Below are positions 17,607 through 46,962 of a stretch of DNA of 64,000 nucleotides, piece after piece (the stretch's first letter is position 1; every line of letters begins with the position of its first letter). Both the position numbers and the translations under genes were made by a program. The stretch spans positions 372,001 through 436,000 of the forward strand of contig NW_026918429.1 of assembly GCF_032062105.1 (NCBI RefSeq), read 5' to 3'. The DNA comes from Saccostrea cucullata. Lineage: Eukaryota. The notes under the pieces are model-generated. The model worked only from the letters and a program-made list of their open reading frames with translations. It did no database searches and was not told the DNA's origin.

Positions 17607-18663
17607 CTAACAAGCTTTTTTGTCACAGCTGACCTGTAATTAAAAAGAAGAGATTGTACATAAACAATTAAAATGTTTTAACTTTGGTAATCGGGAAAGC
17701 GGTTATTCATGGAACAATGATAGGATAATAAACTTACTGTTCCATACAACGACAAACAAGAACATTTGCTCCCACACTGATCCACCGACACCGTGTTACC
17801 GAGTGAAATAAATAGGTCCCCATGCCGACACCCTGTATAACGCCACAAAGTGATCGTTATAAATGTTTCTATTTATGTGCAGACTTAGGGAGTTAATTGG
17901 TAGAGATTGAAGAATACAGAGTGCTCGAAATTAGGCTGATTTGTTAGAAAAGGAATTGGTTTTGTGTGAGAGGAATAAAAGTTCTTGTGTTAGGTAGAGA
18001 GTACATTGTATTAGTTATAAATGCTTACCTGGTTGACAAGTACATGATACTGCAGTCGCTGAGGGACAGACAAAGCTATTTCCTACTGACTGGTCAATAT
18101 ACATACAAACTTCTCCAATGGCACAGTTATTACTCCTGTTCAAAAGAAATGAAAAATATGAATCATTCTTCCTGGTGAGATCTGTTGTAAATCACATCAA
18201 AGGGAAAACATAAAATACTTTCTATTACTCACATGGCATTGCAGGGTTTACCATTCAGTACAGGTGGTACAATATCACGACCTGGAGCAAGATCCCCACG
18301 GAGGGGTCCGGAATCTTCTATAACCGGATTCACCGGATCTACGATCACGGGTCCGGAGTTATCCGGAATAACAGGTTTAACGTCAATAGGTGGCTGGGGC
18401 TGAGGAAACAAAGGTAGAATTTGATCGTTTCCTGGCGCAGGTTGTCCTCCAATCTCAAAAAACTTCAAGGCCACAGGAGTTGGAGCGGGCACGTTCCACT
18501 GGGGCCATCTTGGGAATGGCATTGGAGGAAACCTTGGTCTGTAATAATGATAAGTCGGAGGAAATGGCAAAGGTCGCTTCACACAATTTTTTCTCCTCTT
18601 GTAAGAGTAAGCATTTGTTAAAGATACAAAACACAAAAGGCAAACAATTATTTCTAACTTCAT
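17607..18663 (-). CDS. Paralog A: secreted Pro/Arg-rich protein with C-terminal 12-Cys module (219 aa). Exons: 18663-18233, 18135-18029, 17832-17738, 17633-17607
   Basis: Signal peptide MKLEIIVCLLCFVSLTNA. The spliced C-terminus is CNAMSNNCAIGEVCMYIDQSVGNSFVCPSATAVSCTCQPGCRHGDLFISLGNTVSVDQCGSKCSCLSLYGTVSCDKKAC*. Introns are canonical, and AATAAA lies at 17500-17505 (-). Confidence 0.9.
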
Positions 18664-19537
18664 TGTCCTTCTAGCTGATTGGACTATCAAAATACAATAT
18701 GCATTTGTTGACAGTTTTTTGAGTATATATGAGAAGAAATGACGTTTAAAGTGTGGGTATGAGAACTAATAGACGTCAACACATGTTCCGATTTCTATTA
18801 AATTATGACCATCAATCAGGATTGACGGACTACGTAACGCCACGCACGCTTACATCTTGAGAAAAGAGAGAACGTGTACCATTGGCTGCTCCTTTATGAC
18901 CATCCAATCATAAAGATGGTAACAAGGTTTTTTTTCTATGACAAGCGGCCTGCGGAATGTTCAGCAATACATAGATGTTTTCCTATGGCCTAGAGGTACA
19001 GATTTACCCCAGGAAATGACTTAACTGTTAGTAACATTGGTTTATCCTAGGTATGGCCACTTGACCACTTACGTGTGATCTGTAAAGAGGCGGCCTGTTG
19101 ACGGGGGTTGGGAGTTCATCCTACTCAGCAATTTGTGCAAAGACAAGCCTTTCGGCAATTATAACAGCATCTTTAGGGTTTTTTTTTTTAAAGAAAGTCT
19201 GCAAAGACAATATATTATATACAGGCACTGCACCACGCTTGTTTTGTCATGTATCGTTGTTTATATATTGCATTTCTGTAATTTTCAGCGTATTGTGCAC
19301 TGCACCGACTTCGTTAATATGAAAAAAAGTGTTTGAACTGCAAAAACAATATCTGTAACATTTTATTAAACTCTTTGGAATACATAAACTTTTGTAAGTT
19401 CTTTATAAAAGATACACTAAAACCAGTCAGACTTCACAACTTGAACTTGTCATCAAATCGAGTTTTAGCACTATTACTTCAGTTCAGATATAGAATTTCC
19501 GACTAGCACTCTAGGAAGCACAACGAAGCAGTTTCAC

Positions 19538-20449
19538 TCAACAACTGTCAAATTCGCATTCCACCTGCAAGACGTAAAAACAAAATTAACAGCTATACAC
19601 ATATAATCTCCGATTTTCAGATGATTTATGATAAATATTTTGGTCTAATGAAAGCCTACCTCGCCATTTAAGCTATTACAGTAGCATTTGTTTCCACATT
19701 TATCAACCATTATTGACGTGCCATAGGGAATAAAAAAGTTTTTATGTCGACAGCCTGCAAGGAGAAGACAAATTGATGCAAAGAATTTATGAAAGAATGT
19801 TTTTGAACTTAGAAAAGAGATAAATTGATTGGAAAGTATTGATGACATTTTAGCATTTAACAATAGATAAATAGCTTTTAAGTCTCTCACCTGTTTGACA
19901 TCTACAAAGGGGATGCACGGAATTATTCAGGGGACAGATCGAGGCTACAGCATCACCATCCAGAGTGGGCGGCAAATAAACGTACTGCTGGCCAACAGGA
20001 CAATAGGGTGTACTGCAAGAGACGAACCAAATATATCATCATCCAATCATAAGAAGCATGCAGAATGCAAAAAGATTTCAGGATTTATTTCAGTTATACT
20101 GAAGCCCTTATTACCTAGGGTAGGGGGAGATGTACTTGACTGTATTTACGGGCGTAACCGCTTCCCGTCTCGGAACGTTCATCGTATTTGGAATCATCCT
20201 TTGTGGAGGCCGCATGTTGCCCATGGGAATCGGGGGTCTTAGGTTGCGCACAGGAGGTGGGGGTCTCCTCCCCCTGTTGTTCACTGGCCCCAAGGGTCGA
20301 TTTTCCATGAAGGGTGTGTAATAGTTATCAGATGCATCGTTTTCTACGTTATCGAAAATTATTACAGTCCACGGAACAGAAGCATAGAGAAAGGAATCGA
20401 CATGCACAAAACATAACAAAAAACACAACAGTTTTAATAGAATGTTCAT
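19538..20449 (-). CDS. Paralog B: secreted Pro/Arg/Met-rich protein with a 10-Cys variant of the module (192 aa; alternative ATG at 20467). Exons: 20449-20115, 20012-19891, 19754-19660, 19564-19538
   Basis: Signal peptide MNILLKLLCFLLCFVHVDS. The spliced C-terminus is YPSTPYCPVGQQYVYLPPTLDGDAVASICPLNNSVHPLCRCQTGCRHKNFFIPYGTSIMVDKCGNKCYCNSLNGEVECEFDSC*. Exon 3 (95 nt) and the coding part of exon 4 (27 nt) match A in length. AATAAA at 19362-19367 (-). Confidence 0.88.
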
Positions 20450-20998
20450 TGTTGAACGTAGTACCATGGGGAACTTTGTTATTTTACGAAAGAAAAAAAA
20501 TATTATTGTTTCTTTAATTATTCCTCATGAATACATCCCTGTTTTTTGTCCAATACACACAGAATTGCTAAGTCCAGAAATGTTTACAAACATCCACTCA
20601 ATAATTAGGATCTTGTTTTAATTGATTTGTTTGTATATGTGATTGTTTATGTCTGGAGAGTATGAGTGTGTGTATTGGTGGGTATATTTATCTATATATC
20701 GTGTTATAACCCCAATCCCTGAATGAGGTGTGGGTATATTAGAAATACATCATACGACCCACGTTCAAGGAAAGTACGCATGCTACACAAACAAACGTGT
20801 GGCTATTTGGAATTTCGTAAGATCTGTCAAATATCACCCAGAAAGTAGACGATCACATACCAAAAGCTCGACACATGGCGACATTTCGTCATTGCCGATT
20901 ATGGCAATAAAAGTTTTCATTTATAACGTATTAAAAATGATAGGTTGACTGTTGATTACCATTTATATGAAAAAATATAAATACATGTAAATAGAAGT

Positions 20999-21151
20999 CA
21001 TAGGCGTAGTCACAGGGGGGGCAGCGGGGGCACTAGCCCCCCCACTTTCAGATGTGGGGGGCAAGAGTATTGTAACTTTTTAAAAGAAGCTATTTTCCTT
21101 AACATTACCTTTATATAGGAAATATATATAAAAGTTGGCCTCTACCCCCCC

Positions 21152-21185
<34 letters not shown>

Positions 21186-21363
21186 ACGAAATAGGATTTT
21201 CGAGTTTGGGGAACTTTCCTGTTTTTTTTTTTTTTTGCTTGTCAAAGAATTTCTGGAGTTGAGCCCCCCCACTTTTAAGTTTTTTTTTTTTTTAACTTTC
21301 TTTCTTTTCAAAGAATTTCTGGAGTTGAGCCCCCCCACTTTTAAGTTTGTGACTACGCCTCTG
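20999..21363. mobile_element. MITE with CA...TG ends and 5-bp TSD; internal poly-C run
   Basis: TIR CA(T/G)AGGCGTAGTCACA, GAAGT duplicated at 20994-20998 and 21364-21368, an internal ~65-bp duplication, and a ~40-nt C tract. Confidence 0.8.
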
Positions 21364-21847
21364 GAAGTAGAAAAGTAATTATAACTTAAAAGTGGTTTAA
21401 AACCCTTGATCCGATCGTTGTGATATACTAGTAGTAATATCAATGTATTACTCACAGTTTGAAAGTAATGTCTTTTATTAATTTTCAATATGAAGTTGAA
21501 AATGATTACAAGACAAATTAATTTGTCATATAATCATTTTCAACTTCAGATTGAAAATTAACAAAAGACAGTAATGAAACTGTTAAAAAGTAAGTCGGAT
21601 ATTGGACCAATGCAGGGAGATCCATTTTGGTCTTTTTTATTAGTGTACACACATGTTATCTTATGATTAGAATTAATAAAATAAATCATGTACCTAATCA
21701 ATAAATATTACCGCACATTAATAACCCGATATTCATTGATCAACCCTCCTATTCGAGAAAAAGAAATTAATTATTTTCTCTGCAAATTTTTAAATTATTG
21801 TTTCATTGCAATTAGTTACATAGGCTTTTCTTTGAATTCATAACCAA

Positions 21848-22555
21848 AATAAGAGGTCCACGGGCCACATCGCTCACCCGAATAGCTTTGACCAAGCTGC
21901 TCTTTAAAAGACTTCCCCCTTGTAATACATTTTGTGACCTCACCCTACCCCAAGGGTCATAATTTGGACAATTTAAAATCTACGCCACCCCATAGTGCTT
22001 TCGCATAAGTTTCAGCTTTCCTGGCCCAGTACTGGGTGGTTCCCGAGAAGATTTTAAAGGTATTTCCTACATATTCCAATGTAAAATGTGGGTCCCCTAT
22101 TGTGGCCATGCCCTACCCTCGGGGGTCATGATTTGAACGATTTAGAATCTACACTAGCCTAGGATATGCTTCCACATAAGTTTCGGTTTTTCTGGCCCAG
22201 TGGTTCTTGGGAAGAAGATTTTTAAATTTTTCCCCCTATATATTCGATGTAAAACTTGGATTCCCTATTGTGGCCCCGCCCTATATACTCCCAGGGGTCA
22301 TGATTTAAACATTTTAAAATCTACACAATCCCAGGATACTTCAAGTATAAGTTTTCCCGGCCCAGTGGTTCTTTTTGAGAAGATTTAAGAACCAAAATTC
22401 ATGTAATTTTCAATGAAAAACTTGGATTCCAAATTATGGCCCCGTCCTACCCCCGAGAGTCATGATTTGAATAATTTAAAATCCACACTACCCCAGGATG
22501 CTTCCACATAAGTTTCAGCTTGCCTGAGCCAGTGGTTCTTCGGAAGAAGGCCTGA
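21848..22555. repeat. Helentron-type element carrying about 4 units of a ~168-bp Cg170-like satellite
   Basis: Starts 'aataagaggtccacgggccacatcgctcacc'. The motif 'ccctacc..gggtcatgatttgaa..atttaaaatctacact' recurs at about 21942, 22111, 22280 and 22446. Confidence 0.7.
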
Positions 22556-22793
22556 CAAACTTGATGATTACATGTATATTAAATGACATCTATTTTGAAA
22601 TCCCATGAAATTTGATTTCTGCTAGACACTGGATCCTTTTAAAAAACACCAGAGAGATATAAAACATCAATACATGTAGTAGCAAAATTTATTTGTTACA
22701 ATGGATTTCATTTGAAAGCACATCATATAATTTAAATAGAAGGATTTCTCAAATCATTTATGAAAATAATCTCTTTAAAACAAAAGCACTATT

Positions 22794-24235
22794 TTAAATT
22801 TTCTGCGAATCTTTGACGATCGGAATCACGGGAAAATTCATTTGGACGCTGTCCTTTCTTTTGTTGATTTTCAGCTTAGATGTCGTGGTGACGTCAGAGG
22901 TGAACGCAGTCGGTAACGGATTCTGTGATGTTGAAATGTCGGCTGGTAAAATGTCGGATACTTCCGTTGTTGGAATTTGATCAGATGGTAATAATTTCTC
23001 CGAGTTATTTGGAGCTTTGCATGATTTATTAGAACAAGTTGGCTGTAAAATAAAGAGAAAATTAATGTAGATATTTTCGTCATAAAATCACAAAGTAATA
23101 TAATGTGTTGCACAATTCTCTTGGTCTGATAAAAAAAAAAAAAAAGGAATACTTACAGCTCCATACATATTAAAACAAGAGCACGTGTTTCCACAGGTAT
23201 CCATGGTAACAGTTGTGCCATATGGTATAAATGTATAGTCGACTCTGCAACCTGCTCTGCACTTGCAGTCGACTTCCGGTATGTATATGGGACAAATGTG
23301 GGAACCAGAAAAAACACATTCGTGTCCCGTCATGCAACCTCTGTAAAGAGAGAAAATGGTGGTAAAAAATGATATTTCAGAAAAAAAATTATGTTGGTTT
23401 GTGAAATTTGATGTTATAAAAATATTACATTCAAATCGTTTTAAATATAATCTTGACATTTAATTTTGTAATTTACTTACGTTTTATGACAGGATGGTTC
23501 ACTGGTCTTCGTACTCTCTTGTCCGTTCGTTACAGTTATTGTATTAGAATCTGGGACCAGGTTTGTGTCACTTCCAATGGTGCTGGTATTATTTCCCAAG
23601 TTTTCTTGATTTCTGATCGTGCCAGTCGAATCAATGTTACCCCCATTCACTTCTGGTACTGAGGAAACATCAGTTTTATCTGTTGCTATGGGAGTTAATG
23701 GTCTTGTTACCACGGGTTCTTCTCGTTTATCTGAAGTTGGTAGAAATTCCGATGTAACCATTGGGACCTCAACATTAGATGGAACGATGTTATCCGGAAA
23801 CAGTGGGACGCCGGGGCTCACAGAGTCTGGTGTGTTGTCCGGAAGCTTATCATTCAATACAAGAACAGAATCTGGGTTGACCTTGTCAAACATTGACCAC
23901 GTGTTAGCATCCCTCCATTCATCTGGCACGTTCCACCCGACTCCGTTTTCGGGGTAGATCCCTGAAGGGAATCCTGTGTTGTGTGAATGACCAACATCAC
24001 TGGAGACATGAGAGTGTTCGAATTGTCTTCCATTGAATGGCACGTGGATATGTGTGTTTGGTCTAAATCGTCTGCTCCTGAAAATTCTGCCGACTAGCGG
24101 GATGTATCTGATTGGAAATCGTCGAAACCTGGGTCTCATTGTTATATCGCCTCTGACCCGAACAGGGCGACCAATTGGAAGTATCATTGCGCTGACTATT
24201 TGTAGGAAAAGGAGAAATGGGATAAGAAACTGCAT
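22794..24235 (-). CDS. Paralog C: secreted protein with Arg-rich, His-rich and acidic Pro/Thr regions, the 12-Cys module and a ~75-aa tail (395 aa). Exons: 24235-23481, 23340-23157, 23042-22794
   Basis: Signal peptide MQFLIPFLLFLQIVSA. The module is CHKTGCMTGHECVFSGSHICPIYIPEVDCKCRAGCRVDYTFIPYGTTVTMDTCGNTCSCFNMYGAPTCSNKSC, followed by KAPNNSEK...KDSQKI*. Confidence 0.88.
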
Positions 24236-24334
24236 GGTTCTTTGTATTTAGAAATAGCTAATCCGAAAGATTAGAAGGTTCAGTGTAGTTGTTGTTATTC
24301 TTACTCAATAATGCATGCATACTGTATTGTCTTC

Positions 24335-24341
24335 TTTTATA
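24335..24341 (-). promoter_or_regulatory. TATA box of paralog C
   Basis: TATAAAA 100 bp upstream of the ATG at 24235. Confidence 0.5.
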
Positions 24342-26502
24342 TACAAGACATCTACACATGTTTACGGCATGTTTACGCATTTCACACCTTCAGGAAGCAT
24401 ACGTCACTGAACCACTACTCTTATGAATGGAAACATTTCCTCGTGAATGAAACTCACAAGTTTGGTCATTCACAGGATACTATTACGTTCATTTAATGGA
24501 TTTTTAATACTCGAATTGACCGTAAAGACCCATGACGTATAAGCACGGTTTAATGTTCAGTCAGGACAACGCAAGGTGACCAACGGACCGTGGACTGGTT
24601 GCATTAATCGTGCACAGCAATAAAAGGTGACAATATATTATAAGATGTGACCATTATTAATGACAAAATGAAAAGATGAGTCATGTTGGCCATTTACTTA
24701 CAATGCTAGGTATGCGATAAATGAAATATGGGATAATCATTGATGAATTATGATCTTTGATCGGAATACATATTATAAAAGAGTTCTACGTTTTGAACTT
24801 ATGAAATTGGTAATTCTAACAAGCGTTATCACTCAAAGATTTACAAAAGCAGAGCTAGGAAAAGGAGTTGAGTGGACTTGAAACATACAACAATTTTAAA
24901 ACGTTCAAGCTTTCACCACCAGGAAATATCCGTGTATTAAGTGCAATGCAATCCATTTTGAATCTTTTAACTAATTTATTAATTGTGTTTTCGGCCTTAT
25001 TTTGCTGTTGTTGTGTACAAATCTTCTCGCACAACCAGCATGTGTGTTGTGTAGCAATAATTATTTTCACATGATATTTAAAAAAAAAAGATTTCTATGC
25101 TTAGTAATGCTCTTCTTCATGTCGAGATTATAGCTGAAATTCATTCCAACCTTAAACCTTAAATTTGGCCAAGAGAGACCATGTTTCTGTGATATGAATT
25201 TATTTTTGGAGAACTGTTTCACAATAGGAATAGTAATCTAGCTTGAATTACTGAATAATTATGATTTAATTGTCTTACTTAAATTTGTACACGCATAGTA
25301 AACTTTTTAAAATAAATCTGTTATTTTTCGATGTTCAGCAACTTCTAATCAAGACGTATGTGTAACACTGATACCTACGCGTGACAACTCACAGTGAGAG
25401 TTAAAGTTTATGAAATGCATGTCAAAGCCCAAGGCCAGGAGAAGAAATAGTTGTACACTCAGAAACGGCTGTAACAAGAAAATTACATGTGAAAAAAAGA
25501 ATTAAGTTCTAGCTCGAACCATTTAAAATGATGGCTCATGCCCATATTAAAGTTTCTCAAAAGTAGGTCAACCTTCAAGATGAAAGGATCTGAATTAATG
25601 GTGCCCAAGGAAAGGTCTTGTCACAAGGAACAAACATCTGAAATAAAGAAGCTCTATAGCACCAACTGATCAAAGGGTATTGCTATGATTAAAGTTTTTT
25701 AAGGTCACCTCTGATTCTGAGGTCAAGGGGTAAAAATGTTTTGATATCCATGGGATACTCTTGACATAAGAAACTCACCTGTGAAATAGTCAGAACTAGT
25801 ATGAAAGCCTTAACAGAAACGTTCAGAAGTTACGGCCAAGTTTGAAGTTTTTCTTAAAAGTTACTCAATATAAGGTAGGATTCTTCTCATATTTCTAATA
25901 TTAAAAATTAATGAAATTTTCACAGAATCAAGAAGACAATACCAGTAAGTGATAGTATCAGTGAAATTAAATTTGACCGTTTTATATTTGAGGCAAGGTC
26001 AGGTCAAGGTCATTATCTTTTTCCTTGACATTAAGAATAAAAAATGACTTTTGCCAATCATGTGATACCTACTCTTATTTCAAAAGTTTAATGATTGTTC
26101 TTTTTGCATAAAAACATATTACTATATCGGGTCTATAGCATGACATTACCAAATTTACACAAATAATTTAACTTAACTGGATATTGGCTAATCCGAATTT
26201 GTAAATTGTTTATACGTAGAGCATGCTCTTGTGTGTCGAATCAACCGAGAAATAAAAACTCTGTTTGCAGGTGATGAAGGTAAGTAAGGGAAATACATTT
26301 TCAAACTTCAATATGTAATTATGTTTTGAGGTTAATTTGATCTATTTTGGCATATAATATGAAATTTTCATGTAAGAAAACCATTTTAGTGCCCTAAAAT
26401 CAAAAATATATATTATTATATATTTCCCATATTTTGTAACATTTATTTAGAGCAATATTTCTAATAAAAATTGAAACCGTGAACCCGATTTCGGATCATG
26501 TT

Positions 26503-26645
26503 TAGCTGCAGAACTGTAGCTCTCTGCTTGAGAAAATTCGGACAGATAAGATCCAAAAACCCTCGAATTACGCTGACAATTTTTTGTCGCTCACTTCGGG
26601 TATTTCGAGAATTTTCTCAAGCAGAGAGCTACAGTTCTGCAGCTA
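26503..26645. mobile_element. 143-bp MITE with TAG...CTA ends
   Basis: A ~35-bp perfect TIR TAGCTGCAGAACTGTAGCTCTCTGCTTGAGAAAATTC. The flanks gatcatgtt/gatcacgta look like a decayed 8-9 bp TSD. Confidence 0.75.
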
Positions 26646-26725
26646 GATCACGTAGTGCAATACGATGCAGAAAAAAATAATAAATTAGAAAAGTTACCAA
26701 AATTAAAGAAAAATTGTATTTTTAA

Positions 26726-32780: not shown

Positions 32781-32966
32781 TGTTTTTTTTGCACAGTCAG
32801 AAACTTTTTGATGAGAATCAAAACTATCTGTGTATTTCACGTGCGCATTCTAAACATCCCATTGTTTTAATACACCGAGGGAACAAATGGCAATATACTA
32901 ATAGTAGATACGAATGTGTCATCGCTTTTTCAAATCTGATTGGTCAGCTTGTGGACATCTTTATGC

Positions 32967-32973
32967 TTTTATA
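32967..32973 (-). promoter_or_regulatory. Candidate TATA box of paralog D
   Basis: GTATAAAAG about 190 bp upstream of the ATG at 32780. Confidence 0.4.
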
Positions 32974-33537
32974 CCGATGGCCATGGTAGTTGTAATGTCT
33001 CTATGCCATACACACAACATTTGATGGCCAAGCGTGTTCTGTTGATGGCCAGAAATCCAACCGTCAAATGTGTCACCTTACCAAGTGAGGAAACGAGCCA
33101 TAGAACAAAGAAAATTCGGCTGTATAATTTATTTTGTGTGAGCCGATCTTGATATGAAGATATGAAATCCCCATAAAGCATATCCCAACGTGATCCCGGT
33201 AAATACCGGTAGAACATATTTGGTAAAATTAGAAAATGGTGTCTGTACCTGTCCAAAATATCACAGTGTCAGGAAATGTGTTAATGTTCACAGTCATGGA
33301 CACGGCAAAATTCAACGCTTATGCAATTGATGCATGGAAAACTAGGGGAAATGAAATATTCTTATTAAATACAAATTTTTTAAATATAAAAAAAGAAAAA
33401 ACAAAATAATACGATCTCGAAAAAATGATTTGAAAACTATTATAAATCAATCAATTCTAAGAAAATGCTTTCTGTCTGTTGCTTAAAGAATATTTTTAAA
33501 GGAACAAAAGTCGTTATGTTTCAAAATAGGCCCTGTA

Positions 33538-33660
33538 AAAGTATTGTCTTCCCACAATTGTTTTTACTAAAATAGAAAATTTGGGTAAAATATGACTATG
33601 TAACTAGTCAAAACACCAAATTTCTATTCCAGTAAAAAAATTGTGTGAAGACCGTATGAA
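33538..33660. repeat. Small hairpin/MITE; a related copy lies at about 46363-46456 in an intron of paralog F
   Basis: The inverted ends 'tgtcttcccaca...ttgtgtgaagac' and 'ctgtcttcccaca...tttgggaagacag' are shared by both loci. Confidence 0.5.
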
Positions 33661-33734
33661 AATATCTTAGCATTTTGTAAGTAGTGACGTTGAATGCAAG
33701 ATTTTTAATAATGATATATTTATATATATTTTGT

Positions 33735-33900
33735 ACGTCCGTCCGTCTGTCCGTCCGTCCGTCCGTCCGTCCGTCCGTCTGTTACGCTTTGGGGTACCCA
33801 TCTCTTATCCGCAACTCCTCTCATACCACTGCATGAAATTTGATGAAAAATCTTTATTACATATTGCCATTGTGCACCTTCTATTTTAAGACACATATTT
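33735..33900. repeat. (CCGT)n microsatellite at the end of a CvA/Helentron-like fragment
   Basis: About 11 CCGT/CTGT units followed by 'gttacgctttggggtac', also seen at 50165-50200. Confidence 0.7.
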
Positions 33901-36900
33901 TGGGTTTCCCGGCCACAGGAAAACATACTTTTTCACCAGTTATAACCTATAGCTCATGATAGTTTTATTGGCATTCAAAATCCGTCCATATTCAAGCAAA
34001 GATATTTTATCCTATATCATGATATTACTTTCATACTTTATGTCTGCAACATTTGAATCATTTCATCTGCACTTTTCTCTCTTTACTACAGCCATATATC
34101 TTACTATTGCCACCATATATTCCATAAAAATAGTTATGGTTGAATTAATAATTGTGGGCTTAGCCATTATTACATCTTTATGGGTAACACGCGAACTAAA
34201 GAATAAAAACTGAGTTCTGCATGTCACCCCCGCAATGTACCGAGCAATAAATGATAATCCAATTCTTACAGTGGTGACCACAGATTGGCCCCATGCATGG
34301 TTTACAAGAAACTCTTCCATGAAAGAACAGTACATATATCTTTAACCTAGTTCTGGGGAGATTTCAGCACTGGGACATCTACAAGTATATAACATAATTT
34401 GAAGTAAAAAACTGAAGTGCGGTAGATGATCCGCGTTAATGTTGAAGAAAAGGTGACCTGGGTTCTTTTTAATTTCAGAATACATTTATGAAATTCTGAT
34501 TTTTGATGTTCTACCTAGCTCGTTAGTCATAATGAAAGTTAGGTTCTATGGTCCCAAATAGCTCTGTCCATACATCAAGATGACATTAAACTAGCAAGAA
34601 CATTACGTCATTTTCAACAGAAATCCAGTCATTAGGGTTCAAAATGTAAATGAGCATTTTTACACTTGTTTCCGTAGAAGTTGACAAGGCCAAAACGATC
34701 CCTATGAGAAATTTCTACATTTTTATCTACTTGTTTATCAATTTGTATATCTTTTACCTGCATTCCACACGTCATAATTACTAATTAATATACGATGATT
34801 ATCAAAATAATATTCTAATTACTAACAATATTTGTAGAAGTAATGTGTGCATATGAGAAAAGGAGACAGAAAGAACACTTTTCTTCTAAAAATAAGTCTA
34901 AGTATAATCACCTGGAAAAAAGATAAAACCCTTTCATAAAGTTCTGTTGCGAAATCTATATTCCGTGCAATAACTGTATAAATATTTCCTATATAAGGAA
35001 GCAAATATATGGTGAAAGATATGTTATTGTGCATATATCGATATATATGTATTTTTTAAAAACAATTGTTTATCTATCTGTATGACCCTATTTGTTTTTA
35101 TAGATATACAATAAGTCTAGAGGCAGTTCGGCCTGAGGGTGTGTTCAGGTGAGAAATCGTGTAACGTTACGGTCAACAGATTAATCATTATGATGACTTT
35201 ACAGTGAAGAAGGCTAGCAGATCAGAAAAAAATATGTGCATTAAAATGTGTCCCGTAACTGTCATTTTGAGAACTTACGGAAGTACATGTATCCCAGTTA
35301 TATATTCAATTTAAAATATCGAAATAACATTATTTATCTTTAAAAATATTCCTAGAATTACATGTAAACTGTAAATCAAATTCATTATCAAGTTCATTCA
35401 TAATCTGCGAAATTCGTTCTTTTTTACTCAAGCCCTAGAAGGGCTTGAGTTATCTAAAACGATGCTAGGTCATCGATTTACTTAGTTTAAAAACACAAAA
35501 ATATATTATTTTAATAGACAAAAATATTTCTAGAGACAAAAATGAAGCTCATCTTGAAAACGTTTGTATATTCAAACATATTAAGTGTTAAATGTCGGAT
35601 TCTATTCTATGGCGAATGAACAATGAGTGAAGCTCCACAGCCGCAACAGTTTCTATACAGAAATTTCGCGCTTTCCTTCGCGTAGGAATCTCAGGTAACT
35701 TAGACAGTCGCCGACAAAGCATCCTTGGACGAGTCCACTGCAGACTCTGAAAGATGACGCAGGTTACCCCATCGTTAACAATTCTACAACGCATGGTCAG
35801 AAAATTTATGGCTGTACCCCCCAACTAAATTTGCTTTTCACAGGCCTGCAAATGATGTGTACTTTGAGTTACAGCAAAATATAATAGCACAAAATAAATG
35901 TTAAATTCTAGTATTATTTGAAGCTTTGGTAACGGAACCTATTTTATAATAACTTCTTTTGGATTCTTATGGAATATGTATTCGATATGCCGCTCAGCTA
36001 GATGAACCTCATCGTCTCAAGCCACGGTTTTACATTTTGGCCGTGGTTTTGGAACCTTAATAGGTTTTTTGGAGCCCGGAGCCCCCCCCCCCCCTTCCAC
36101 TTTGAAAAACTTTTCTACAGGCTTGTAGCAAGCTATTTAGAATGATATATATTGAATGTGATGTACATCATTATGAAAAAAAAAAATACAAAAAACGTAT
36201 ACTAAATGTCCACATAAAAAAATATTTCATTAAATTAAGAAACGGCAACCTATAAAATATTCCTGAAATTGTATCACGTAAATTCTTCTTAAAAAATAGT
36301 AAGATTAATTATATTTCTTCTAATTAAAATCAATATATGAATTTTGTTTCATGTACATGTAGTTTATTCAACAGAAGATTGAACTCAATAGTCCTCATCT
36401 TATAAAATTTAGGGATATTAATGACACTTCCGAATTGACTTTCTACAGCTTGAGTATTTCTGACGTTTTGTCAGTATATACTTGTTTTTTTTACTAGATG
36501 ATGGAAAATATAAAATGCAATTTTGATTTGAACAATATTTTTAAAAAAGCGTTTTGTAAAGAGAACCATTTAAGTACACTTTTTATTTGATTAAAATCAG
36601 TGCACAGTAAGATGGCTAATTTATGATTATCAAAATATAGTAAATGTCGGTAAATCTTTTACAATTAAGTAATTGAAAATTTAGTATTAAAGAATGAAAT
36701 TCCATTTCAAATTGAATAACAGGAGTGCTACCCATTTCGTTTTGAATTTTTCTCAAAATGAAATGAACAATTTAAAAAAAAAAACAACAAGAATACGTTT
36801 TTTCAAATATAACACTCCTTTTATATTTTTTGAACATATTCAGTTAACGCGTAATATTGTACAACAGTTTGTAAATGTGGCATGGACTTCCTTGCCATTT

Positions 36901-37033
36901 ATGTTAATGTTTGGTAGATTATGGAACTTCAGTACGGTCCTTGGTGTAACTCGGACATAATGATGTCGTCAGTCGATTGATCACCCTGTAGATTAAATAA
37001 CCCTCTGACGACTCACTAAGATATTGCTATTTG

Positions 37034-37068
37034 ATTGGTTGCCAATATTTTCTCTCGCACGTATAAAT
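37034..37068 (+). promoter_or_regulatory. CCAAT boxes and TATA box of paralog E
   Basis: ATTGG at 37034, CCAAT at 37042 and TATAAAT at 37062-37068, 34 bp upstream of the ATG at 37102. Confidence 0.5.
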
Positions 37069-37101
37069 TCAATTTAATAAATTAGAGGTTTATTTGATAA
37101 A

Positions 37102-38925
37102 ATGATGAAGTTACGAATTGGGTGGATTTTGATGTGTTTTGTTGGTGCAGTGTTCAGTCAAGGGAACACGCTTAACCTTACCCCGAACACAGGCAGTGGT
37201 TTGGACGTTTTTTCGTTTCCTACACAGAATTTGGGAAACAGTCAAACTCCAGGTACTGATTCAAATCTGAATTCTGGATTACAACCTGTGAACACAGGAT
37301 TAAGCGCCTCTACAACAAATACAGTGGGAACCCAGACCGGAACTCTCGGAACAAATCCAGCTGCTGGAACCGGAACTGGAACGATTCAAGGAGGTTTTCC
37401 TACAATTGGTGGCGCAACTTCTTTACAAAACACTGGTCTCCCATCCCAAACTACCGGTTTAACTCAAGGTCAACCAGGGTTTCCCAATGGAGTGCAACTT
37501 GGAGTTAATGGGTTTCCACCTACTCAGGGTATCCCTGGTCCCATGAATCAGGGATTCCCGCCTCAGTTTGGACCACAAGGACGTGTTCCTGGACAAGGGG
37601 GTTTTATGGGACAGGCCGGTTTTAATGGACAGCCAGGACCTAATGGACAACCAGGAATGGGATTTAATGGACAAGCTGGCTTTAACAATCTCCCAGGATT
37701 CAATGGACAGCCTGGGTTCAACGGACAACCTGGGTTCAATGTGCCTCCAAATTTTAACGGTCAACCTAATATGCCAGGAGGATTCAACGGACAACAAGGA
37801 TTTCCACGACCAGGATTCAATGGTGCACAGGGCGGATTCAATGGTGGTCCACCAGGTTTCGGACAACCGGGTTTCAATGCTGGACAACAGGGATTTAATG
37901 GCGGACAACCACCACTAAACGGATTTCCAGGAGGACAGCCAGGATTACCCAATCAACAAGGATTTCCGGGACAACCCGGGGCATTTCCTGGACAATTGCA
38001 ACCCTCTCTAGTTCCCGGGGGTCAAGGAAGCCAGACACAATGTCACCAGACGTAAGTTAATTTTACATTTTAAGCCATACATAGCCAGATATTTTCAGTT
38101 GATACATTTACGATGGTCATATTTCATATATTAATCATACCAGATTTTATTTCAGGGATTGTCCAACTGGTCAACAATGCGCCTTTACCCCAACTGTTGC
38201 TGCACAAGCTCAATATATGTGTCCGAAATGGATTCCTATGTTAAGATGCCAGTGTGTTGCGGGTAAGATTACAACATGTATACGTTTTTTAAATGTAATA
38301 ATTACATGTATATATGCTTAATATATATCTTTTACAAAATGCTTCATTATATTATGTTCAGTGTAAAAAAAAATTGATGTAAAATTTCTTTCAATCAGGT
38401 TGCCGGGCACAGAACACATTTATTCCTTTCGGACAGTCTCGACAGATTGACCAATGTGGAAACGTGTGTACCTGTAATAACAGTCAATCTGGAGAGGTAA
38501 GGATGCTTCAATAATGTATTTAATTTCTCTTACAAATTCCTCCTAAGATGGGCAGTATAGGTTACACAGTATATGTGAGTCATCGTTAAAGATAAACCTT
38601 TGGATGGTCTCACACACATGCTTTAATTGTTGCACAAAGAGATACCGAATCTAGGAAATGGTGCCGATACAAATTTGGTTCCTGGTTTATATTTATTGTT
38701 ACCAGGCACAAACTAGGCACGAGATCTAGATTTTTAGCTATAACTTAACAATTAAGTCATAAAGGAATTACAGTTTAGTGCCCTGGACCTGGGAACTGTA
38801 AGATTATGCCTGGTAGTATCTCACGGCCCCGACAAACAGAGATTTATGTCCATGGTCTGTACGTGCTTTTTCTTCTGTTTCAGGCTGCCTGCACGATGCG
38901 AGCTTGTCCGGATCTTTCTGGATAG
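37102..38925 (+). CDS. Paralog E: secreted Gly/Gln/Pro/Phe/Asn-rich (GFNGQP repeat) protein with the 12-Cys module (398 aa). Exons: 37102-38051, 38156-38262, 38399-38496, 38884-38925
   Basis: Signal peptide MMKLRIGWILMCFVGAVFS. The module is CHQTDCPTGQQCAFTPTVAAQAQYMCPKWIPMLRCQCVAGCRAQNTFIPFGQSRQIDQCGNVCTCNNSQSGEAACTMRACPDLSG*. AATAAA at 39045-39050. Confidence 0.92.
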
Positions 38926-40928
38926 AAATAAAGAAAATCTGTCATCATACATGATGTCCTTTACTAAATTATTACAACGTTACAAGGGCTATTCCTGCGT
39001 CGCCCTATTTTGTTTCTGTGATTTTTTGTACTTATGTTTTTTATAATAAATATACAATTTTTTGTATGTCTGTGTCTTTTTGTTCCCTTTTTTTCTCTCG
39101 AAAATGAGTATGTCCAGTACCTGGCCATAAGTGAGTCATAGTTTTATATTTCTTTTATTGAAAAATAAATTTTCTTAATACTATTATATAATGCAATTTT
39201 ATTTATAGCTAATTTTTAAATGTCCAAAAATGGTATAGTTAAATGAAAATGTATATATATTATTAAATTGAAAAAAGTATAGATAAATTGTGGTGGTTTC
39301 CTGAAAATTTAGTCGTAGGAATTGCAGTAATATTGCATGTCAATTTTACGGCTGTATATGTATTTTGTTAAGAAGTCATAGTAATTTGAAGTAAAAAGTA
39401 TTTTTTGTCGAATTTGTAAATCATTCTTAAAGGTTAATGTTTAACTTTGCTAAGCATTTCAATTCTGTTAAGATAGAATTTCGATTTTGCAGGATTCTGT
39501 GAAAATATGGACATTGCTACAATTATGACTCATTTTGGACATATTGTGTATATTTTTATTTTGTAAATAACTTTAAATATCCCCCCCCAAAAAAAATATA
39601 AAACGAAGAAACATATCAAAACGTATAGAAAACCGTATACCGGTACTGAATTTGGGTTAAGAATTTGATTTAAAGTAGAATAGGAAATATTTAAAGATTT
39701 TTAACTTTAAAACATCAAGATCCGACACAATGCTCCACAAAGCACCAAATTCAAAATAGCATTTTTAACAATGCAATTGAAGATAATAGATAAAATAAAA
39801 GAATCTGAATTTCTTTAAAAAAAAGTACTTTTTCCTTTAAATATGAAAATTTTGATACTCTGACTTTCTATTATAAAATCGTTTTGAATTTTTAATGTTA
39901 CTTTAATGAACGTAGTCTATATCTTATTATACTTAACTGTAAAGTTATTTTGGGGGTGTCAAGATTTACACTTTTAATGCCATAAGAAGAAAATTGTACA
40001 TTTATACAATATTAAATTATTAAATCAATATATAAGATTTTTATTTCAAAATTAGCAAATTGTTCCAACCAGCAAAATTGAGGAACATCTTAACCTATAT
40101 AAAGTATTAATGTTAGATCATACGCTGTAGAGTGCACATTGTATAAACTACGTTATATAAAATGATATTTTGTGACAACGATGGTCATATTAATGGTAAT
40201 GTAATATATATAATGGGACTGGGCTGTCCATCAAAAACGAAAAACACTGACTTCTCCTTGACCCAGCCGTCAGTACAGACGACCATTTTGTTAGATCCGA
40301 TTTATCTGTCTATATATTTTTTTAACATCGTTATTAAAAAAAACCTAGATCCAGACATATTTGTACCTGAAAGGTGGAACCTCCCAATAAAAAGTTCCAG
40401 ATTAGATTTTTCCACCCTCCTGTTCTTTACATGTCTATTTTTGTAAAGAATAAACAACAGCATCATTAGATTAAATTTTTGTAAAAAAAAAAAAAAATTG
40501 AAATAAATAAAATAAAACAAAAATAAATGTTATGGTAAAACCGCACTTTGTCCATCAGTGACAATGATAAAGAGTTCATGTGGGGCATATTAAGTATAAG
40601 GAGAAAGGACATATAAAAAATATTTTTTAATACTGCATAATGTGATTGGGAATTGAATGGTCGCTATCACCTGTGCAGATGAAAGAAACAGTATATTATA
40701 CCAATAAGTAATAACACATACATAACATTAAAAACTTCTGTGTTCAATACACGTTTTGCAATAAAACTGTCCATAAAGTCTCATATTGTATCGCCACTGA
40801 CCCTGGCTGTTTAGTAGATCATCATATCCTTTAACACATTCATCGATAAATACAGCGCCATAAAACATCCCGAGGCACCATATCTACACATTCCAGAACT
40901 CTTTCACAATCACTTTGTCCTGGGCACC

Positions 40929-43900
40929 ATGGAATATCTAAAAACCTGTTGGAATCTCTTTTTCGTACTTTTGTTCTTGTTCATTAAGTTCTCCGTTGAA
41001 CAAGGATTTACCCCGTTAGTATTCCGTGGTTTTGGGGCTCCCCCGCCTCTGTTTCCAGGATTTGGACCCCCTCCACCAGGTGTACGTACTCTCTTACCAG
41101 GCCCTCCCGGGTTTCCCGCCATTCCTGGACCACCACCACTACCTATCATTTCTCCCCCTGTGACAACTTTATCTGACGCAGGAACTGGAAGTATTGCCTT
41201 GAGTGGTGAAACAGTGCCAACCACTTTTGATTTAAGCGGATTCTCAAATTCACTTCAAACATTACCTGCTACGACTGACACAGCTAGTATCGTGGGGCAG
41301 TCAGGTTTCGATGGAGGATTAATTACTTTGAGTGATCCGGGCAACACTTTAGAGGGTCAAAATTTAATTACAACATTGACTGGCCAGGATGCATTACTAG
41401 GAGGCACCACAACTTCGATAGCAAATGGCCTAGCAACAGGTTTAATAACCTCCGATGCAGGAGTACCGGAAGGTGTGAATCCTGCGTCTGCTGCAGAGTC
41501 ATCGTTTGTTTCACGCTTTAGTAACAGCAACTCTAATGATGGTACATCGTCACAAATGATTGTAAATGGACAACTTAATTCGTTTGATTCTGTATCAAGT
41601 GTAAATCCACAAAATTTTGATGCCAGTGCGATTTTAAATACAGTCTTTGGAAATTCGAACACAGATCCAAGCTCCAGTCGGACCACAACGGTAACAGACA
41701 ATTCACCGAATCGAATCGTGCTTACCAGCGGTGTCTCCAATAATGCCATTCCCAATAACATTATTCAACGTCAGCCAGTGTCTGTCGAAAACACCGGAGA
41801 AAGGATTCCTTCTCTGAGTGAACTTCAACAAATGTTTACACCAACCCAGTTCTCTAATACGGCACAAGACAATGCTATTGGAACTGGTGGGTCTCCAGCT
41901 GTTGGCATTCCTGCTACTGGTTCTAGGACTGGGTTATCCGTAAGTAATAGTAGACAAATATTAACTGATCCTTCTGGAAGAAATGATGAAACGAGGATAG
42001 TAAGAGTAAACACAGCAACAACTATTAATCAAATTGATGGCACCAGAAAAATTACATCACCCTCAGATGAACTAGATTTGGACTTTAGGAACTACATTAG
42101 AGCTAATGGAGGGCAGGTAGATCCAAATGATATTCTGTCTAGATTTCCTGGACCAAGTGGCATAAGTACAGTATCGAGGACATCAAATGAAAGAATGATG
42201 ATCCCTTCTAATTCAATTTTTAGTCGAAATTCCAACGATCCAAATACAAGGTCTCGTACTACCATTACAGAAATTCAAACTAGATCAAACAGGGGTATCG
42301 ATCCTTTGAATCAGCAATTCATGCCTTCAGTGTTTGCAGACCCAGCCAGAAATCAGGCCGCCACAGCAATTGCACAAAATGGAAATAGTATTGACAACAG
42401 TCAAATAAGTCGCCCATCAACCTCGGTGTCCGAGGTTAAAAACAAGTCCAACATAGTTATAAATGGAAATAGCAATATAGTAGGCTCTAAGGTAGATATG
42501 AATAACATCATCCGAACTTCTGTTGACGTGCAGCCTCAGTCTGTTAATCTCCAACGCTCGGATTTTGAAAATACTCTCTCTACAGTAGGATCAACAGTAG
42601 CTCCAGTTAACCCATTAAACGATAGATTTGATGTAAGAATGGATCCTGTGTCAAACATTACCAGAAGACAACCAAGCACCAATTCCCAAAGAGGAAGTAA
42701 AATTATGTTTGTGGACGGTAACAATAATGATGATGAAACAACTTTCCAAGAAGCCTCTTCAGCGACGGGCACCAATAATCAACCAGGAGCTAATTTTAAC
42801 ACAAACCTCCCAACAGCCAGAAATCAACCTGGAGTAAATTCCAATATCAATTTCCCAAACAACTTGCCAGAGGTTGGAAGTAATAACAATTTACCAATGG
42901 TCTCCTTTGATCCTTCCAGACGCGGTAATTCTATGGTGAGCTCGCAGCAAAACCCAGGCATCCAAAGTTTCCAAGGCACCAACAGAGAGCTTAATGGAAA
43001 TGTTGCAGTAAATGATCCAGGCACAATCAACAGAGAACTTAATGGAAATGTCGCAGTTAATGATCCAGGCACAACCAACAGAAGTTTTAATGGAAATGCT
43101 GCAGTAAATGATCCTGGCACAACTAACAGAGAGCTTAATAGTAATGTTGCATTTAACGACCCACGCACAACCAACAGAGGGCTAAACGGTAATGTTGCAT
43201 TTAACGACCCACGCACAACCAACAGAGGGCTAAACGGTAATGTTGCATTTAACGACCCACGCACAACCAACAGAGGGCTAAACGGTAATGTTGCATTTAA
43301 CGACCCACGCACAACCAACAGAGAGCTTAATGCAAATGTTGCATTTAACGATCCAGGCACAACCAACAGAGGGCTAAATGGAAATGTTGCATTTAACGAT
43401 CCAGGCACAATCAACAGAGGGCTAAATGGAAATGCTGCATTTAACGATCCAGGCACAACCAACAGAGGGCTAAATGGAAATGCTGCATTTAACGATCCAG
43501 GCACAACCAACAGAGGGCTAAATGCAAATGTTGCATTTAACGATCCAGGCACAACCAACAGAGGGCTAAATGCAAATGTTGCATTTAACGATCCAGGCAC
43601 AATCAATAGAGGGCTAAATGCAAATGTTGCATTTAACGATCCAGGCACAATCAATAGAGGGCTTAATACAAATGTTGCATTTAACGATCCAGGCACAACC
43701 AACAGAGAGCTTAATGGAAATGTTGCAATTAATGATCCAGGTAGAACTAATTTAAGAGACCCGAACAGAATTCGAACAACGGCACAAGTCACAGGATTTT
43801 CGCGCCAACCCACTACCTCACAAATATTCCCAACCAACAACGAGGCAGCAGTACGTGGAAATACAGTTAATTTAGATCCAATTAGAACGGGTATGACAGA

Positions 43901-46900
43901 TCCGAGTAACGGTATATCATCGCAGACACAGACAAATTTGGAAAGATCTAGAACAGAAAATAATGCACCTTTACCTGGCAGTTCAAGTACTAGAAGATTC
44001 ATAAAAAAGACAACAACTATCAGGAGAATTATCTCCAATCCTAATGAAAGCGACACAAATAATAGGTCACAAATTAACAATACCCGTATACCAGATGCTT
44101 CTAGCTTCCGCGTTTTCGCCAATTTAAACAATAGAATGAATGGAATGAACACCAATTTAAATGCAAATGTGGATCCTTTGACTGGAGATGGAGTTGCAGG
44201 GAATAGAGATAGTTTTGTTTCCTTTCCAAACTCTGCAGATTCCACAAGAGTACCACAAATCATGGGTGTTCAAAACTCTAGATCTTTTTCAAGTGTTCTT
44301 CCTGGAAATATGGGAACATCCAACTCATTTGTTAGACCTACAGGTTCCGCTAATGTTAACCGTCAGTTCATGGGGACAGGATTTGATCCCGAATCCAACA
44401 CACAAACATGGGGAACTGTGTTTGGAACTATTCAAAGTCAAAATATGCCCTCTACAGGCAGTTTGTCCTCAAACAGTAATGGTGTTGTGGATCCTAGTTC
44501 AGCAGAAAGAAGATTTTCCTCAAATGCTTTCACAGGAAATAATGGTAACTCAAACACGTTTGAAAGAGGAGTGGGCTCTACTGACAATGTTAATAACCAG
44601 TCCACAGTGACAAGATTTGATCCGGTTTCCAGCTTACAAGCTGAAAATGCTTCAAGACCTTCCCAAAGCCAAATGTCTCGCTCTAGTAACATTTTCAACC
44701 CTAACTCTAACGCTGTCGTCAATCCTGGGTCAATAGAAAGACGATTTTCCTCAAATTTTCCTCTTGGAAATAATAGACCCTTTAACAGCCAGTCATCGAT
44801 GGCAGGATTTGATCCTGCCTCCAGTTCACAAACTGTAGGGTCAATAGAAAGACGATTTTCCTCAAATTCTCCTCTTGGAAATAATGGACCCTTAACTAGT
44901 CGGTCGTCGGTAACAGGATTAGATCCTACATCAAATTCTCAAACTGGAGGGTCAATAGAAAGACGATTTTTCTCAAATTTTCCCCTTCGGAATAATGGAG
45001 CCTTTGATAGTCAGTCGCCGATAACAGGATTTGATCCTGACTCTAACCCACAAACTGGAGGGGAAATGGTTAGAACTATGCAAGGTCCAAATAATCCTTC
45101 TAGAAGTAGTTTTAACAATGGACTTCCGCGAAATTCACAACAGAATACTAGAGTGGGCGGGTTTGTGAGTATGAATGCAGGAACATCATCCAGAACATCA
45201 GCTGACCCACAGAGCTCTGCTTTCGGAACATTCGGCGACGCAGCATCCAGAGGTTCTGGGTTCCAAACAAGAGTAGCGTCTACCAATAATGTCGGGATAA
45301 GACCACCCTCAACTGGTTCTCTGACCAGAAACAGTGCTGTTTCAAGAAGTGTCGATCCAAATGGCAACACAATAATTGAAACTTCAAGGCAGAATGTTGT
45401 CTTATCCTCCGAACCTCAAAACAACAGAAATGAAACTGGGAATTTCATGGTCCAAGGAACGACACTACCTCCAGTAGTTGTAGCAAACGACACTCAGTCT
45501 TGTAAAACGAGGTAAATCTATATAATGTAAATGTAATACGTTGTTTCGATTTATAGTCGAGAATTCGTTGACATCCCTAGCATATATATTTGACAAACGT
45601 ACAAAACATATAATGAAATGAAATTCATTTTTCCCTTTCTGCTTTGCAGTGATGACTGTCAAACTGGAAATCAGTGTACATACAACAGGAATTTCCTATG
45701 TCCTGATTGGGTAGATTCAGTCACATGCCAATGTCAACCAGGTACCAATCCTTATTTATTAAATATCGACCCACAATTTGTATAATACGTTTCTTTTATT
45801 ATTTTGAGCAGTTTTCATACTTTTTGGGGCTTCTTTTTATGTGAATCTACCCTCCCATGAAAAACTTTGAGCTCTTTGAGTCGGTTCTATAAAGAAACTT
45901 CAGTCTGGAATTTACTTAAGCCACCATTTTATCCACTATGAGATTTCGTTTTAGAAATTTGTGAATTGTTATACCCGGATATTAAACAATTTCAACAGAT
46001 TTGATGACAGGAATGTGACATTTGAATTTAAACTGAGTTTTATTTATATTACTGATTTATTCAATATTTTATTTTGCTTTTCGCTAAGACCAAATATATG
46101 TAATAGACTGAATAGACTGTTTTCTAAGAAGGAATGACTTTTTGTCTGTGTCCCTTTGTGTGCATCTCTCTAAAACCATACCAAGTTTATCGCGGAGATT
46201 ATTTGAATTTAAGATGCCACTGTCGTCGGTATTTTGATAGGATAAGATTGCAGTCATTGTTTTCATGTACTAATTATAAAGCATTTCATTTACTTAATAT
46301 AAAAACAATAAATGGGCCATGGAAGGTCTCCCTTGAGGTACACCATAAGAAATTTTGAAAGAACTGTCTTCCCACATTTTTTATTAAGATAAATATTCTG
46401 TTGTTATGACTATTTACCAAATTTTCCATTTTAATTAAAAAAATTTGGGAAGACAGAACACATCACACCCTGAAACCCTCTGGTTAAATAAAATTTTGTG
46501 CAATTCACACCATTTACATCATTGCAACATTCTGCATTTACCGCCACTCAATTAAAAAATTACCATATATTACATGTATATGTTTATTTATAACAAGAAA
46601 TAATAAATTGTTTGCTGTAAATGTTTTAATTTCTCATAGGATGCGATGCATTCAATCAGTTTATACCTCTGGGGACCAAGATATCAATTGACAATTGTGG
46701 AAATGAATGTGTTTGTATCAGAAATGATGGAATCGTAAGTATTCAAGTCAAATAAGTTTTCCTCAGATAAAATAAAGATTTTTAGTCGAATATTATGATG
46801 TTTGAACCTACAATGAAAAAACAACAGCTTAAAAAATATCAGAAAACCACAGTTTTAAAACTACATCAATCACAATAGCACTGTATGAAATTTTATTAAT

Positions 46901-46962
46901 TAAATTTGTGCACAATTCTGTTTTAGGCAACCTGTACTCAAAACGCGTGTCCGCAAGCATAG
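40929..46962 (+). CDS. Paralog F: very large secreted Asn/Ser/Gly/Thr-rich repeat protein with the 12-Cys module (1601 aa). Exons: 40929-45511, 45650-45741, 46640-46734, 46927-46962
   Basis: Hydrophobic N-terminus MEYLKTCWNLFFVLLFLFIKFSVEQG and a 4.58-kb exon 1. The module is CKTSDDCQTGNQCTYNRNFLCPDWVDSVTCQCQPGCDAFNQFIPLGTKISIDNCGNECVCIRNDGIATCTQNACPQA*. AATAAA at 47029-47034. Confidence 0.92.
42981..43748 (+). repeat. Coding minisatellite: 16 x 48 bp, NR(G/E)LN(G/A)N(V/A)AFNDP(G/R)T(T/I)
   Basis: Direct repeats are visible in both the DNA and the translation of paralog F. Confidence 0.95.

What the first reader, a model, noticed from the sequence alone, without database searches (positions are those of the whole stretch)
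17607..46962. Hidden cluster of six secreted proteins: one conserved spliced 12-Cys module, six unrelated low-complexity regions
Seen: ORFs that look unrelated (A 219, B 192, C 395, D 1397, E 398 and F 1601 aa after splicing) all start with a signal peptide. Each ends exon 1 at a phase-2 GT donor, in five of six just after a lone Cys (CNA|, CHK|, CQE|, CHQ|, CKT|). Each then splices into the same module: C-x4-6-C-x2-G-x2-C-x7-15-CP-x7-8-CxC-x2-GC-x5-FI(P/S)xG-x5-D-x-CG(N/S)xCxC-x4-5-G-x3-C-x4-C. Exon sizes are conserved (exon 3 is 95 nt in A, B and F; exon 2 is 107 nt in A and E). The exon-1 regions share no sequence and differ in chemistry. Inference: a tandemly expanded family in which the Cys module handles assembly or cross-linking and exon 1 supplies interchangeable material properties, as in a composite shell matrix, periostracum, larval cement or mucus. 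I do not recognise it as a named family.
Basis: partly seen in the sequence, partly recalled or inferred. Interest (0 to 1): 0.92.

Follow-up and report, generated by a model that had tools for sequence, protein, structure and literature searches.

The report
Ancient bivalve secreted-protein gene cluster
Six neighbouring oyster genes make secreted proteins that each join a different floppy arm to one shared small disulfide-bonded domain; the family, apparently undescribed, occurs across bivalves and probably helps build a secreted material such as shell matrix or mucus.

Summary
The six genes are real and intact, with the stated lengths. RNA contigs support the junctions of A, B and C. A equals RefSeq XP_062604285 (Saccostrea cucullata, uncharacterized). 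Corrections: B has 10 Cys; C and D lack intron 2, carry tails and share an exon-1 motif; three further relatives lie on another contig. The family spans oysters, pearl oyster, scallops, mussels, a unionid and a mactrid, always as signal peptide + low-complexity arm + one module, with the same intron phases wherever I could map them. Oyster gene order is kept, and a head-to-head cluster recurs in a probable scallop and probably in mussel. The module has two parts: a 6-Cys unit with no match found, and a fibronectin-I/VWC-subdomain-1/mucin-E/pacifastin-like unit that scores below every Pfam cut-off. The arms are conserved within each paralog line, so they are not interchangeable. Best reading: structural matrix proteins with a shared docking domain. 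Tissue and partner are unknown. No paper naming the family was found. The scan's earlier notes on it come only from this window.

The parts
17607..18663 (-). Gene A, 219 aa; exons 18663-18233, 18135-18029, 17832-17738, 17633-17607; Pro-rich arm (25% P) with one extra Cys27 and a GPLRGD motif; 12-Cys module at the C-terminus
   Evidence: identical to XP_062604285; RNA joints
19538..20449 (-). Gene B, 192 aa (198 from ATG 20467); exons 20449-20115, 20012-19891, 19754-19660, 19564-19538; Pro/Asn/Arg arm; 10-Cys module lacking C1 and C3
   Evidence: intron-free transcript of the Magallana ortholog (L055)
22794..24235 (-). Gene C, 395 aa; exons 24235-23481, 23340-23157, 23042-22794; Arg-rich start, His motif, Val/Pro/Thr/Ser/Asn arm, module, Thr/Ser/Pro tail
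   Evidence: orthologs of 390, 362 and 384 aa
28336..32780 (-). Gene D, 1397 aa; exons 32780-29674, 29569-29386, 29238-28336; His/Pro start, Lys/Pro block, Thr-rich mucin-like block, module, tail with seven GISIGGVIYIP-like motifs
   Evidence: ortholog in M. angulata, tail 73% identical; not RNA-tested
37102..38925 (+). Gene E, 398 aa; exons 37102-38051, 38156-38262, 38399-38496, 38884-38925; uncharged Gly/Pro/Gln/Asn/Phe arm; last loop CTMRAC
   Evidence: relatives in mussel and probable scallop; not RNA-tested
40929..46962 (+). Gene F, 1601 aa; exons 40929-45511, 45650-45741, 46640-46734, 46927-46962; Asn/Ser/Thr/Gly arm with a 16-aa repeat (about 16 copies) and a 37-aa repeat (3 copies)
   Evidence: close homolog P0050 shares the e1-e2-e3 junctions; not RNA-tested
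32781..37101 (.). Head-to-head interval between D (-) and E (+); candidate shared control region
   Evidence: window layout; divergent layout in L058 and probably L057; regulatory function is inference

Best explanation
An ancient bivalve family of secreted structural matrix proteins, kept as a cluster. Each protein is exported by a signal peptide (inferred from sequence). The module folds as two small disulfide-bonded units: a 6-Cys N-unit (C1-C3 bond inferred from their joint loss in B) and a fibronectin-I/E-module-like C-unit (predicted fold; C7-C10, C8-C12, C9-C11 inferred by analogy with VWF E and pacifastin domains). The module acts as a shared, mainly non-covalent docking domain, binding other members or one common matrix partner (inferred). 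The paralog-specific arms (Pro-rich, His-rich, Thr-rich and probably glycosylated, Gly/Gln/Phe-rich, Asn/Ser-rich) give the secretion different properties (inferred). My estimate of the site within this reading: mantle secretions (organic shell matrix, periostracum, ligament) about 45%, gill or pallial mucus 30%, larval or juvenile foot secretion 15%, other 10%.
For: Shown: intact spliced genes, with transcripts for A, B, C, and all three present in two of the runs; near absence from a 1.9-Gb poly-A read sample, so expression is restricted. One architecture in every full-length homolog. Every hit with a source name is a bivalve, among 1.84 billion representatives. C6-to-C10 spacing is x3-x17-x3-x1 in all but one homolog. 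Module exons are 72-95% identical to Magallana, arms 50-72%. AF2 pLDDT 90.6; residues 33-77 align with fibronectin-I, tPA finger, collagen-II VWC, mucin/VWF E modules and pacifastins. Low-complexity domains are a general feature of shell proteomes (PMC5379566).
Against: No tissue, proteome or binding data. The arms are not acidic (D+E 1-12%), unlike many mineral-binding shell proteins. No paper cites the accessions I searched. Fold scores are low (best Z 4.2; no Foldseek E<=0.001), and this fold type serves many functions.
Confidence: 0.58

Rival explanations
1. Pacifastin-like canonical serine-protease inhibitors carried on disordered stalks; the C11-x4-C12 loop is the reactive site.
For: The fold matches pacifastins weakly. 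PF05375 hits 3 of 22 modules below cut-off, and full-length P0056 at 19.4 bits vs 27.9. E reads CTMRAC, and Thr follows C11 in many homologs.
Against: A, B, C and D lack that Thr. The loop of B is identical in Saccostrea, Ostrea and Magallana, not hypervariable. Spacing is C-x17-C-x3-C, against the pacifastin C-x9-12-C-N-x-C (consensus from own knowledge). The genome has about 50 segments above the pacifastin cut-off elsewhere and none listed in this cluster (the exon split lowers sensitivity).
Confidence: 0.12
2. Covalent network formers: the module's intramolecular disulfides reshuffle into intermolecular bonds after secretion, as cnidarian minicollagen Cys-rich domains do (own knowledge).
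For: Dense Cys module. A has one extra conserved Cys27 after a basic cluster in three oyster genera.
Against: Even Cys counts, paired loss in B, and a confident compact monomer model. No cystine-knot or VWD polymerisation domain.
Confidence: 0.13
3. Growth-factor (BMP/TGF-beta) binding modulators that use a VWC subdomain-1 surface.
For: Matches to collagen-II VWC, CCN3 VWC and NELL2 (Z 2.1-4.2); VWC-type atlas neighbours at 0.75-0.78, lead level only. UniProt auto-names two mussel members 'VWFC domain-containing'.
Against: Only six of the ten VWC cysteines and no CC doublet. Arms of up to 1500 aa with material-like composition are not expected for such modulators.
Confidence: 0.07
4. Cell-to-matrix linkers or glycan-scaffold binders, in the manner of insect cuticular proteins (one binding domain, variable arms).
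For: GPLRGD in A of three oyster genera and in a mussel member, GPTRGD in another; aromatic residues are frequent around the CP and FIP motifs.
Against: No chitin-binding or lectin Pfam hit, even at E<=1-10. RGD occurs only in some members.
Confidence: 0.1

Closest known systems
E module (TILa, PF12714) / fibronectin type I-like / VWC subdomain 1 of VWF, MUC2, MUC5AC, FCGBP and collagen II
   Same: Six-Cys beta-rich unit with C..CxC..G..C-x4-C layout; structural alignments over residues 33-77; sub-threshold Pfam hits
   Different: x17 and x3 spacings; preceded by an unmatched 6-Cys unit instead of TIL; single copy; no VWD, C8 or cystine knot; only in bivalves among named hits
Pacifastin inhibitors (PF05375)
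   Same: Same small fold class and four-residue last loop; E has CTxxAC
   Different: Spacing and CNxC motif not met; Thr after C11 missing in four of six; single domain on a long arm
Molluscan low-complexity shell, byssus and mucus matrix proteins as a class (e.g. accripin11, PMC9808598)
   Same: Signal peptide, disordered region, conserved Cys domain, clade restriction
   Different: Accripin11 has 8 Cys in a helical C-x3-C-x6-C-x3-C pattern and an acidic tail; this module is 12-Cys and beta-rich, and has not been shown in any matrix
Single-VWC (SVWC) proteins of invertebrates
   Same: Secreted, one VWC-like unit
   Different: No SVWC Pfam hit at E<=1; extra N-unit and long arms

Membership tests
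Pacifastin (PF05375) | Score above gathering cut-off 27.9 | tested here: not met
   best 19.4 bits; 3 of 22 weak hits
Pacifastin (PF05375) | C-x9-12-C-N-x-C-x-C-x2-3-G-x3-6-C-T-x3-C (from own knowledge) | tested here: not met
   spacing 17,3,1,8,4; Thr only in E and F of the six
Pacifastin (PF05375) | Canonical serine-protease inhibition | not testable with these tools
   needs an assay
VWC (PF00093) | Ten Cys with C-terminal CC-P-x-C subdomain | tested here: not met
   six Cys in the unit and no CC doublet; best 16.5 bits vs 27.6
TILa / E module (PF12714) | Score above cut-off 27 | tested here: not met
   16-17 bits; 7 of 22 weak hits, best E 0.0022
TILa / E module (PF12714) | Fibronectin-I-like six-Cys fold | tested here: inconclusive
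   consistent low-Z matches, rmsd 2.2-3.1 over about 42-45 residues; no coordinates were returned, so disulfides could not be read
TIL-E tandem of gel-forming mucins/VWF | Ten-Cys TIL domain before E; VWD and C8 in the same chain | tested here: not met
   N-unit has six Cys; no TIL, VWD or C8 hit
Accripin11 family | Eight-Cys helical pattern and acidic C-terminus | tested here: not met
Shell matrix proteins (functional class) | Peptides in shell matrix and mantle expression | not testable with these tools
   run tissues are coded; accessions not found in papers

The most novel reading that the evidence does not exclude
A kit for one composite material, conserved across bivalves: co-expressed, clustered paralogs hetero-assemble through a shared two-part module whose N-unit is a new disulfide fold, while each paralog adds a fixed arm chemistry. 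A relative on C23121 may also swap N-units by mutually exclusive splicing.
Probability: 0.2. Interest if true: 0.75.

Novelty: new variant of a known kind. Interest (0 to 1): 0.5.

Why it matters
It defines an unannotated protein family and domain combination in at least six bivalve families, with a cluster that seems older than the oyster-scallop-mussel splits (over 400 million years, from own knowledge). Low-complexity matrix proteins of molluscs are usually lineage-specific and hard to trace. Here a shared module lets very different arms be followed across the class and offers a small, expressible handle to test how a bivalve matrix assembles. The design (signal peptide + disordered arm + Cys domain) is familiar and no function is shown, which caps the interest.

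Tried and rejected
Pfam on exons, modules and full-length homologs: nothing above cut-off. PDB by sequence: only RNase hits at E 0.3-4.5, taken as chance. Word-index homolog searches with the module were nearly blank because of the word and length limits; the full HMMER scan found the family. Four hits in that scan (P0070, P0074, P0075 and similar Cys repeats) are unrelated repeat proteins or weak and were not used. The N-unit alone (pLDDT 84) gave no Z>=2 and no meaningful Foldseek match; for 37 residues this does not prove a new fold. Atlas feature searches gave only 0.75-0.78. Nine completed paper searches by accession and by description found no account of the family (less overlap; subscription journals not covered). 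The module tree is too short to resolve deep branches. Exon shuffling was rejected as the origin of the arms. Adult byssus is unlikely, because cemented oysters keep all six genes (own knowledge of their biology). Exact look-ups of exon-1 pieces found nothing.

Full report
Observation. A six-frame scan for Cys motifs recovers the module exons of all six genes. Testing every GT/AG choice near the junctions gives one sensible model per gene. Lengths are 219, 192, 395, 1397, 398 and 1601 aa, with canonical introns, phases 2,1,0 (A, B, E, F) or 2,0 (C, D), and no internal stop. A-D lie on the minus strand and E-F on the plus strand, head to head across 4.3 kb. Window exons score 21.5-92 bits against the module profile; 20 shuffled windows reach 6-13.

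Splicing. On 17580-23560, contigs from three studies lie only on the exons and run on across the predicted joints: A e1-e2-e3, B e1-e2-e3 (e4 in one contig), C e1-e2-e3. These runs are only guessed to be RNA, but the contigs lack the introns. They differ by a few percent and by indels, so they come from other individuals or a sister lineage. A raw poly-A run (1.9 Gb read) shows nothing on A and B and traces on C, so expression is restricted; tissue names are coded. The NCBI model XP_062604285 (Saccostrea cucullata) equals gene A. An intron-free contig encodes the Magallana B ortholog. D, E and F were not tested on RNA.

Corrections to the finding. B has ten Cys, lacking C1 and C3 together, also in Ostrea and Magallana. 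C and D have lost intron 2 and have tails after the module; the D tail holds seven GISIGGVIYIP-like motifs and is 73% identical in M. angulata. C and D share an N-terminal His motif, and C aligns with a Pinctada protein over its arm (E 4e-10). The genome holds further relatives on contig C23121: G (His-rich arm, 12 Cys), H (degenerate) and I.

Range. A profile of the module against 1.84 billion representatives gave 32 hits at E<=0.001, 17 at 1e-10. Named members come from Saccostrea, Ostrea, Crassostrea/Magallana, Pinctada, Argopecten, Mytilus, Sinanodonta and Mactra, all as uncharacterized proteins or automatic 'VWFC domain-containing' entries. No named hit is outside bivalves, but not every hit was looked up. 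Each full-length member has a hydrophobic leader, a low-complexity arm and one module. Intron phases 2,1,0 recur in Mytilus, Argopecten and Sinanodonta, with a 95-nt exon 3 in Mytilus and Sinanodonta (104 nt in Argopecten). The order C-B-A followed by a convergent calponin-homology gene is kept in O. edulis, S. echinata and M. angulata, where D is also in view. An assembly I take to be a scallop has an E-like gene head to head with a C-like gene and another member. A Mytilus locus has a similar divergent layout, though the identity of its minus-strand gene is not shown. M. coruscus has three members with near-consecutive accessions. In the module tree, E groups with mussel and scallop proteins (91/87) and C with a scallop protein (80/52); neither branch is firm. 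Arm composition agrees: E with the scallop 475-aa protein r 0.92, D with the mussel 1353-aa protein 0.91, C with the scallop 459-aa protein 0.84. I infer that several paralog lines predate the oyster-scallop-mussel splits.

The module. AlphaFold2 on 22 sequences gives pLDDT 90.6, with a short helix and hairpin followed by a beta-rich unit. Residues 33-77 align with fibronectin type I, the tPA finger, collagen-II and CCN3 VWC, E modules of MUC2, VWF and FCGBP, and pacifastins, all at low scores (best Z 4.2). Pfam agrees weakly: TILa, pacifastin, VWC2L_C and VWC, all below cut-off. The first six Cys form a unit that matches nothing in Pfam or the PDB. The intron between the two units, and gene I with three copies of the N-unit exon and no C-unit exon found, suggest that the units are separable. 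Disulfides could not be read from the model. C1-C3 is inferred from joint loss, and the C-unit pairing from known E and pacifastin domains.

How it most likely works. Shown: intact, spliced, clustered genes; a module under stronger constraint than the arms (72-95% vs 50-72% identity to Magallana); restricted expression. Inferred: secretion; bonds within the chain; a docking role for the module; material roles for the arms. I put this reading at 0.58, with mantle secretions the likeliest site and mucus second. Rivals are disulfide reshuffling into a network (0.13), pacifastin-like inhibition (0.12, most plausible for E and F), glycan or cell linking (0.10) and BMP binding (0.07).

Known families. 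It is built like other molluscan low-complexity matrix proteins, and its second half resembles an E/VWC-subdomain-1 unit. It fails the tests for pacifastin, VWC, TILa, TIL-E and accripin11 (see membership table). The C. gigas shell VWC protein in PMC5854119 has six VWC repeats and so has a different architecture. No paper in the library names the accessions searched or describes the family.

Limits and handling. Whole-module searches and folds used database proteins by id (P0001, P0047 and others). Joined models were built only inside local scripts, to check frames, composition and the tree. N stretches in fetched loci were left as they are.

Verdict. A real, apparently undescribed family and ancient cluster found across bivalves: a new variant of a known kind of protein, function not shown. 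Interest 0.5.

Noticed in passing
G000:C23121:4774-7359 (L019), minus strand: Gene I: secreted-type exon 1 ending in a lone Cys at phase 2, then three copies of the N-unit exon. Each reads best as phase 2 in and phase 1 out, so they may be mutually exclusive (an in-frame tandem reading via a nearby acceptor is possible for one). No C-unit exon was found before the contig end.
   Followed up: partly
G000:C23121:8133-10744 (L018/L019), minus strand: Gene G: seventh full member, 410-aa exon 1 with His-rich repeats (60 His), fused exon 2+3, standard VWC-like C-x2-C-x-C spacing, Arg-rich tail.
   Followed up: partly
G000:C23121:35740-37465 (L023/L042), minus strand: Gene H: degenerate member with an extra Cys in the N-unit and loss of C8 and apparently C12.
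   Followed up: partly
window 21800-22580: High-copy interspersed repeat between genes B and C, with very high contig depth; a related-looking 156-bp tandem lies at 56167-56553.
   Followed up: no
window 9253-13588, plus strand: Large exons of a calponin-homology/coiled-coil gene (about 1690 aa in other oysters) that flanks the cluster convergently in four oyster genomes.
   Followed up: partly
window 60923-61624, plus strand: Ser/Asn/Lys-rich exon of the next gene; a close homolog's model (P0050) fuses F to it, probably an annotation error.
   Followed up: partly
window 18290-18310 (gene A): GPLRGD motif conserved in three oyster genera, and found after the module in a mussel member (P0057).
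   Followed up: partly
L056 (JGI 3300018951): Intron-free contig encoding a full member; from memory this accession range is plankton metatranscriptome data, which would hint at larval expression. Not verified.
   Followed up: no
G000, many contigs (C13891, C11357, C5588, C18883, C1181, C15890): About 50 segments above the pacifastin cut-off, many in tandem arrays; unexpectedly many for a bivalve, perhaps VWC-like repeat proteins.
   Followed up: no
G000:C23121:1564-3579, plus strand: Broken reverse-transcriptase fragments of a non-LTR retrotransposon downstream of gene I; observed only.
   Followed up: no
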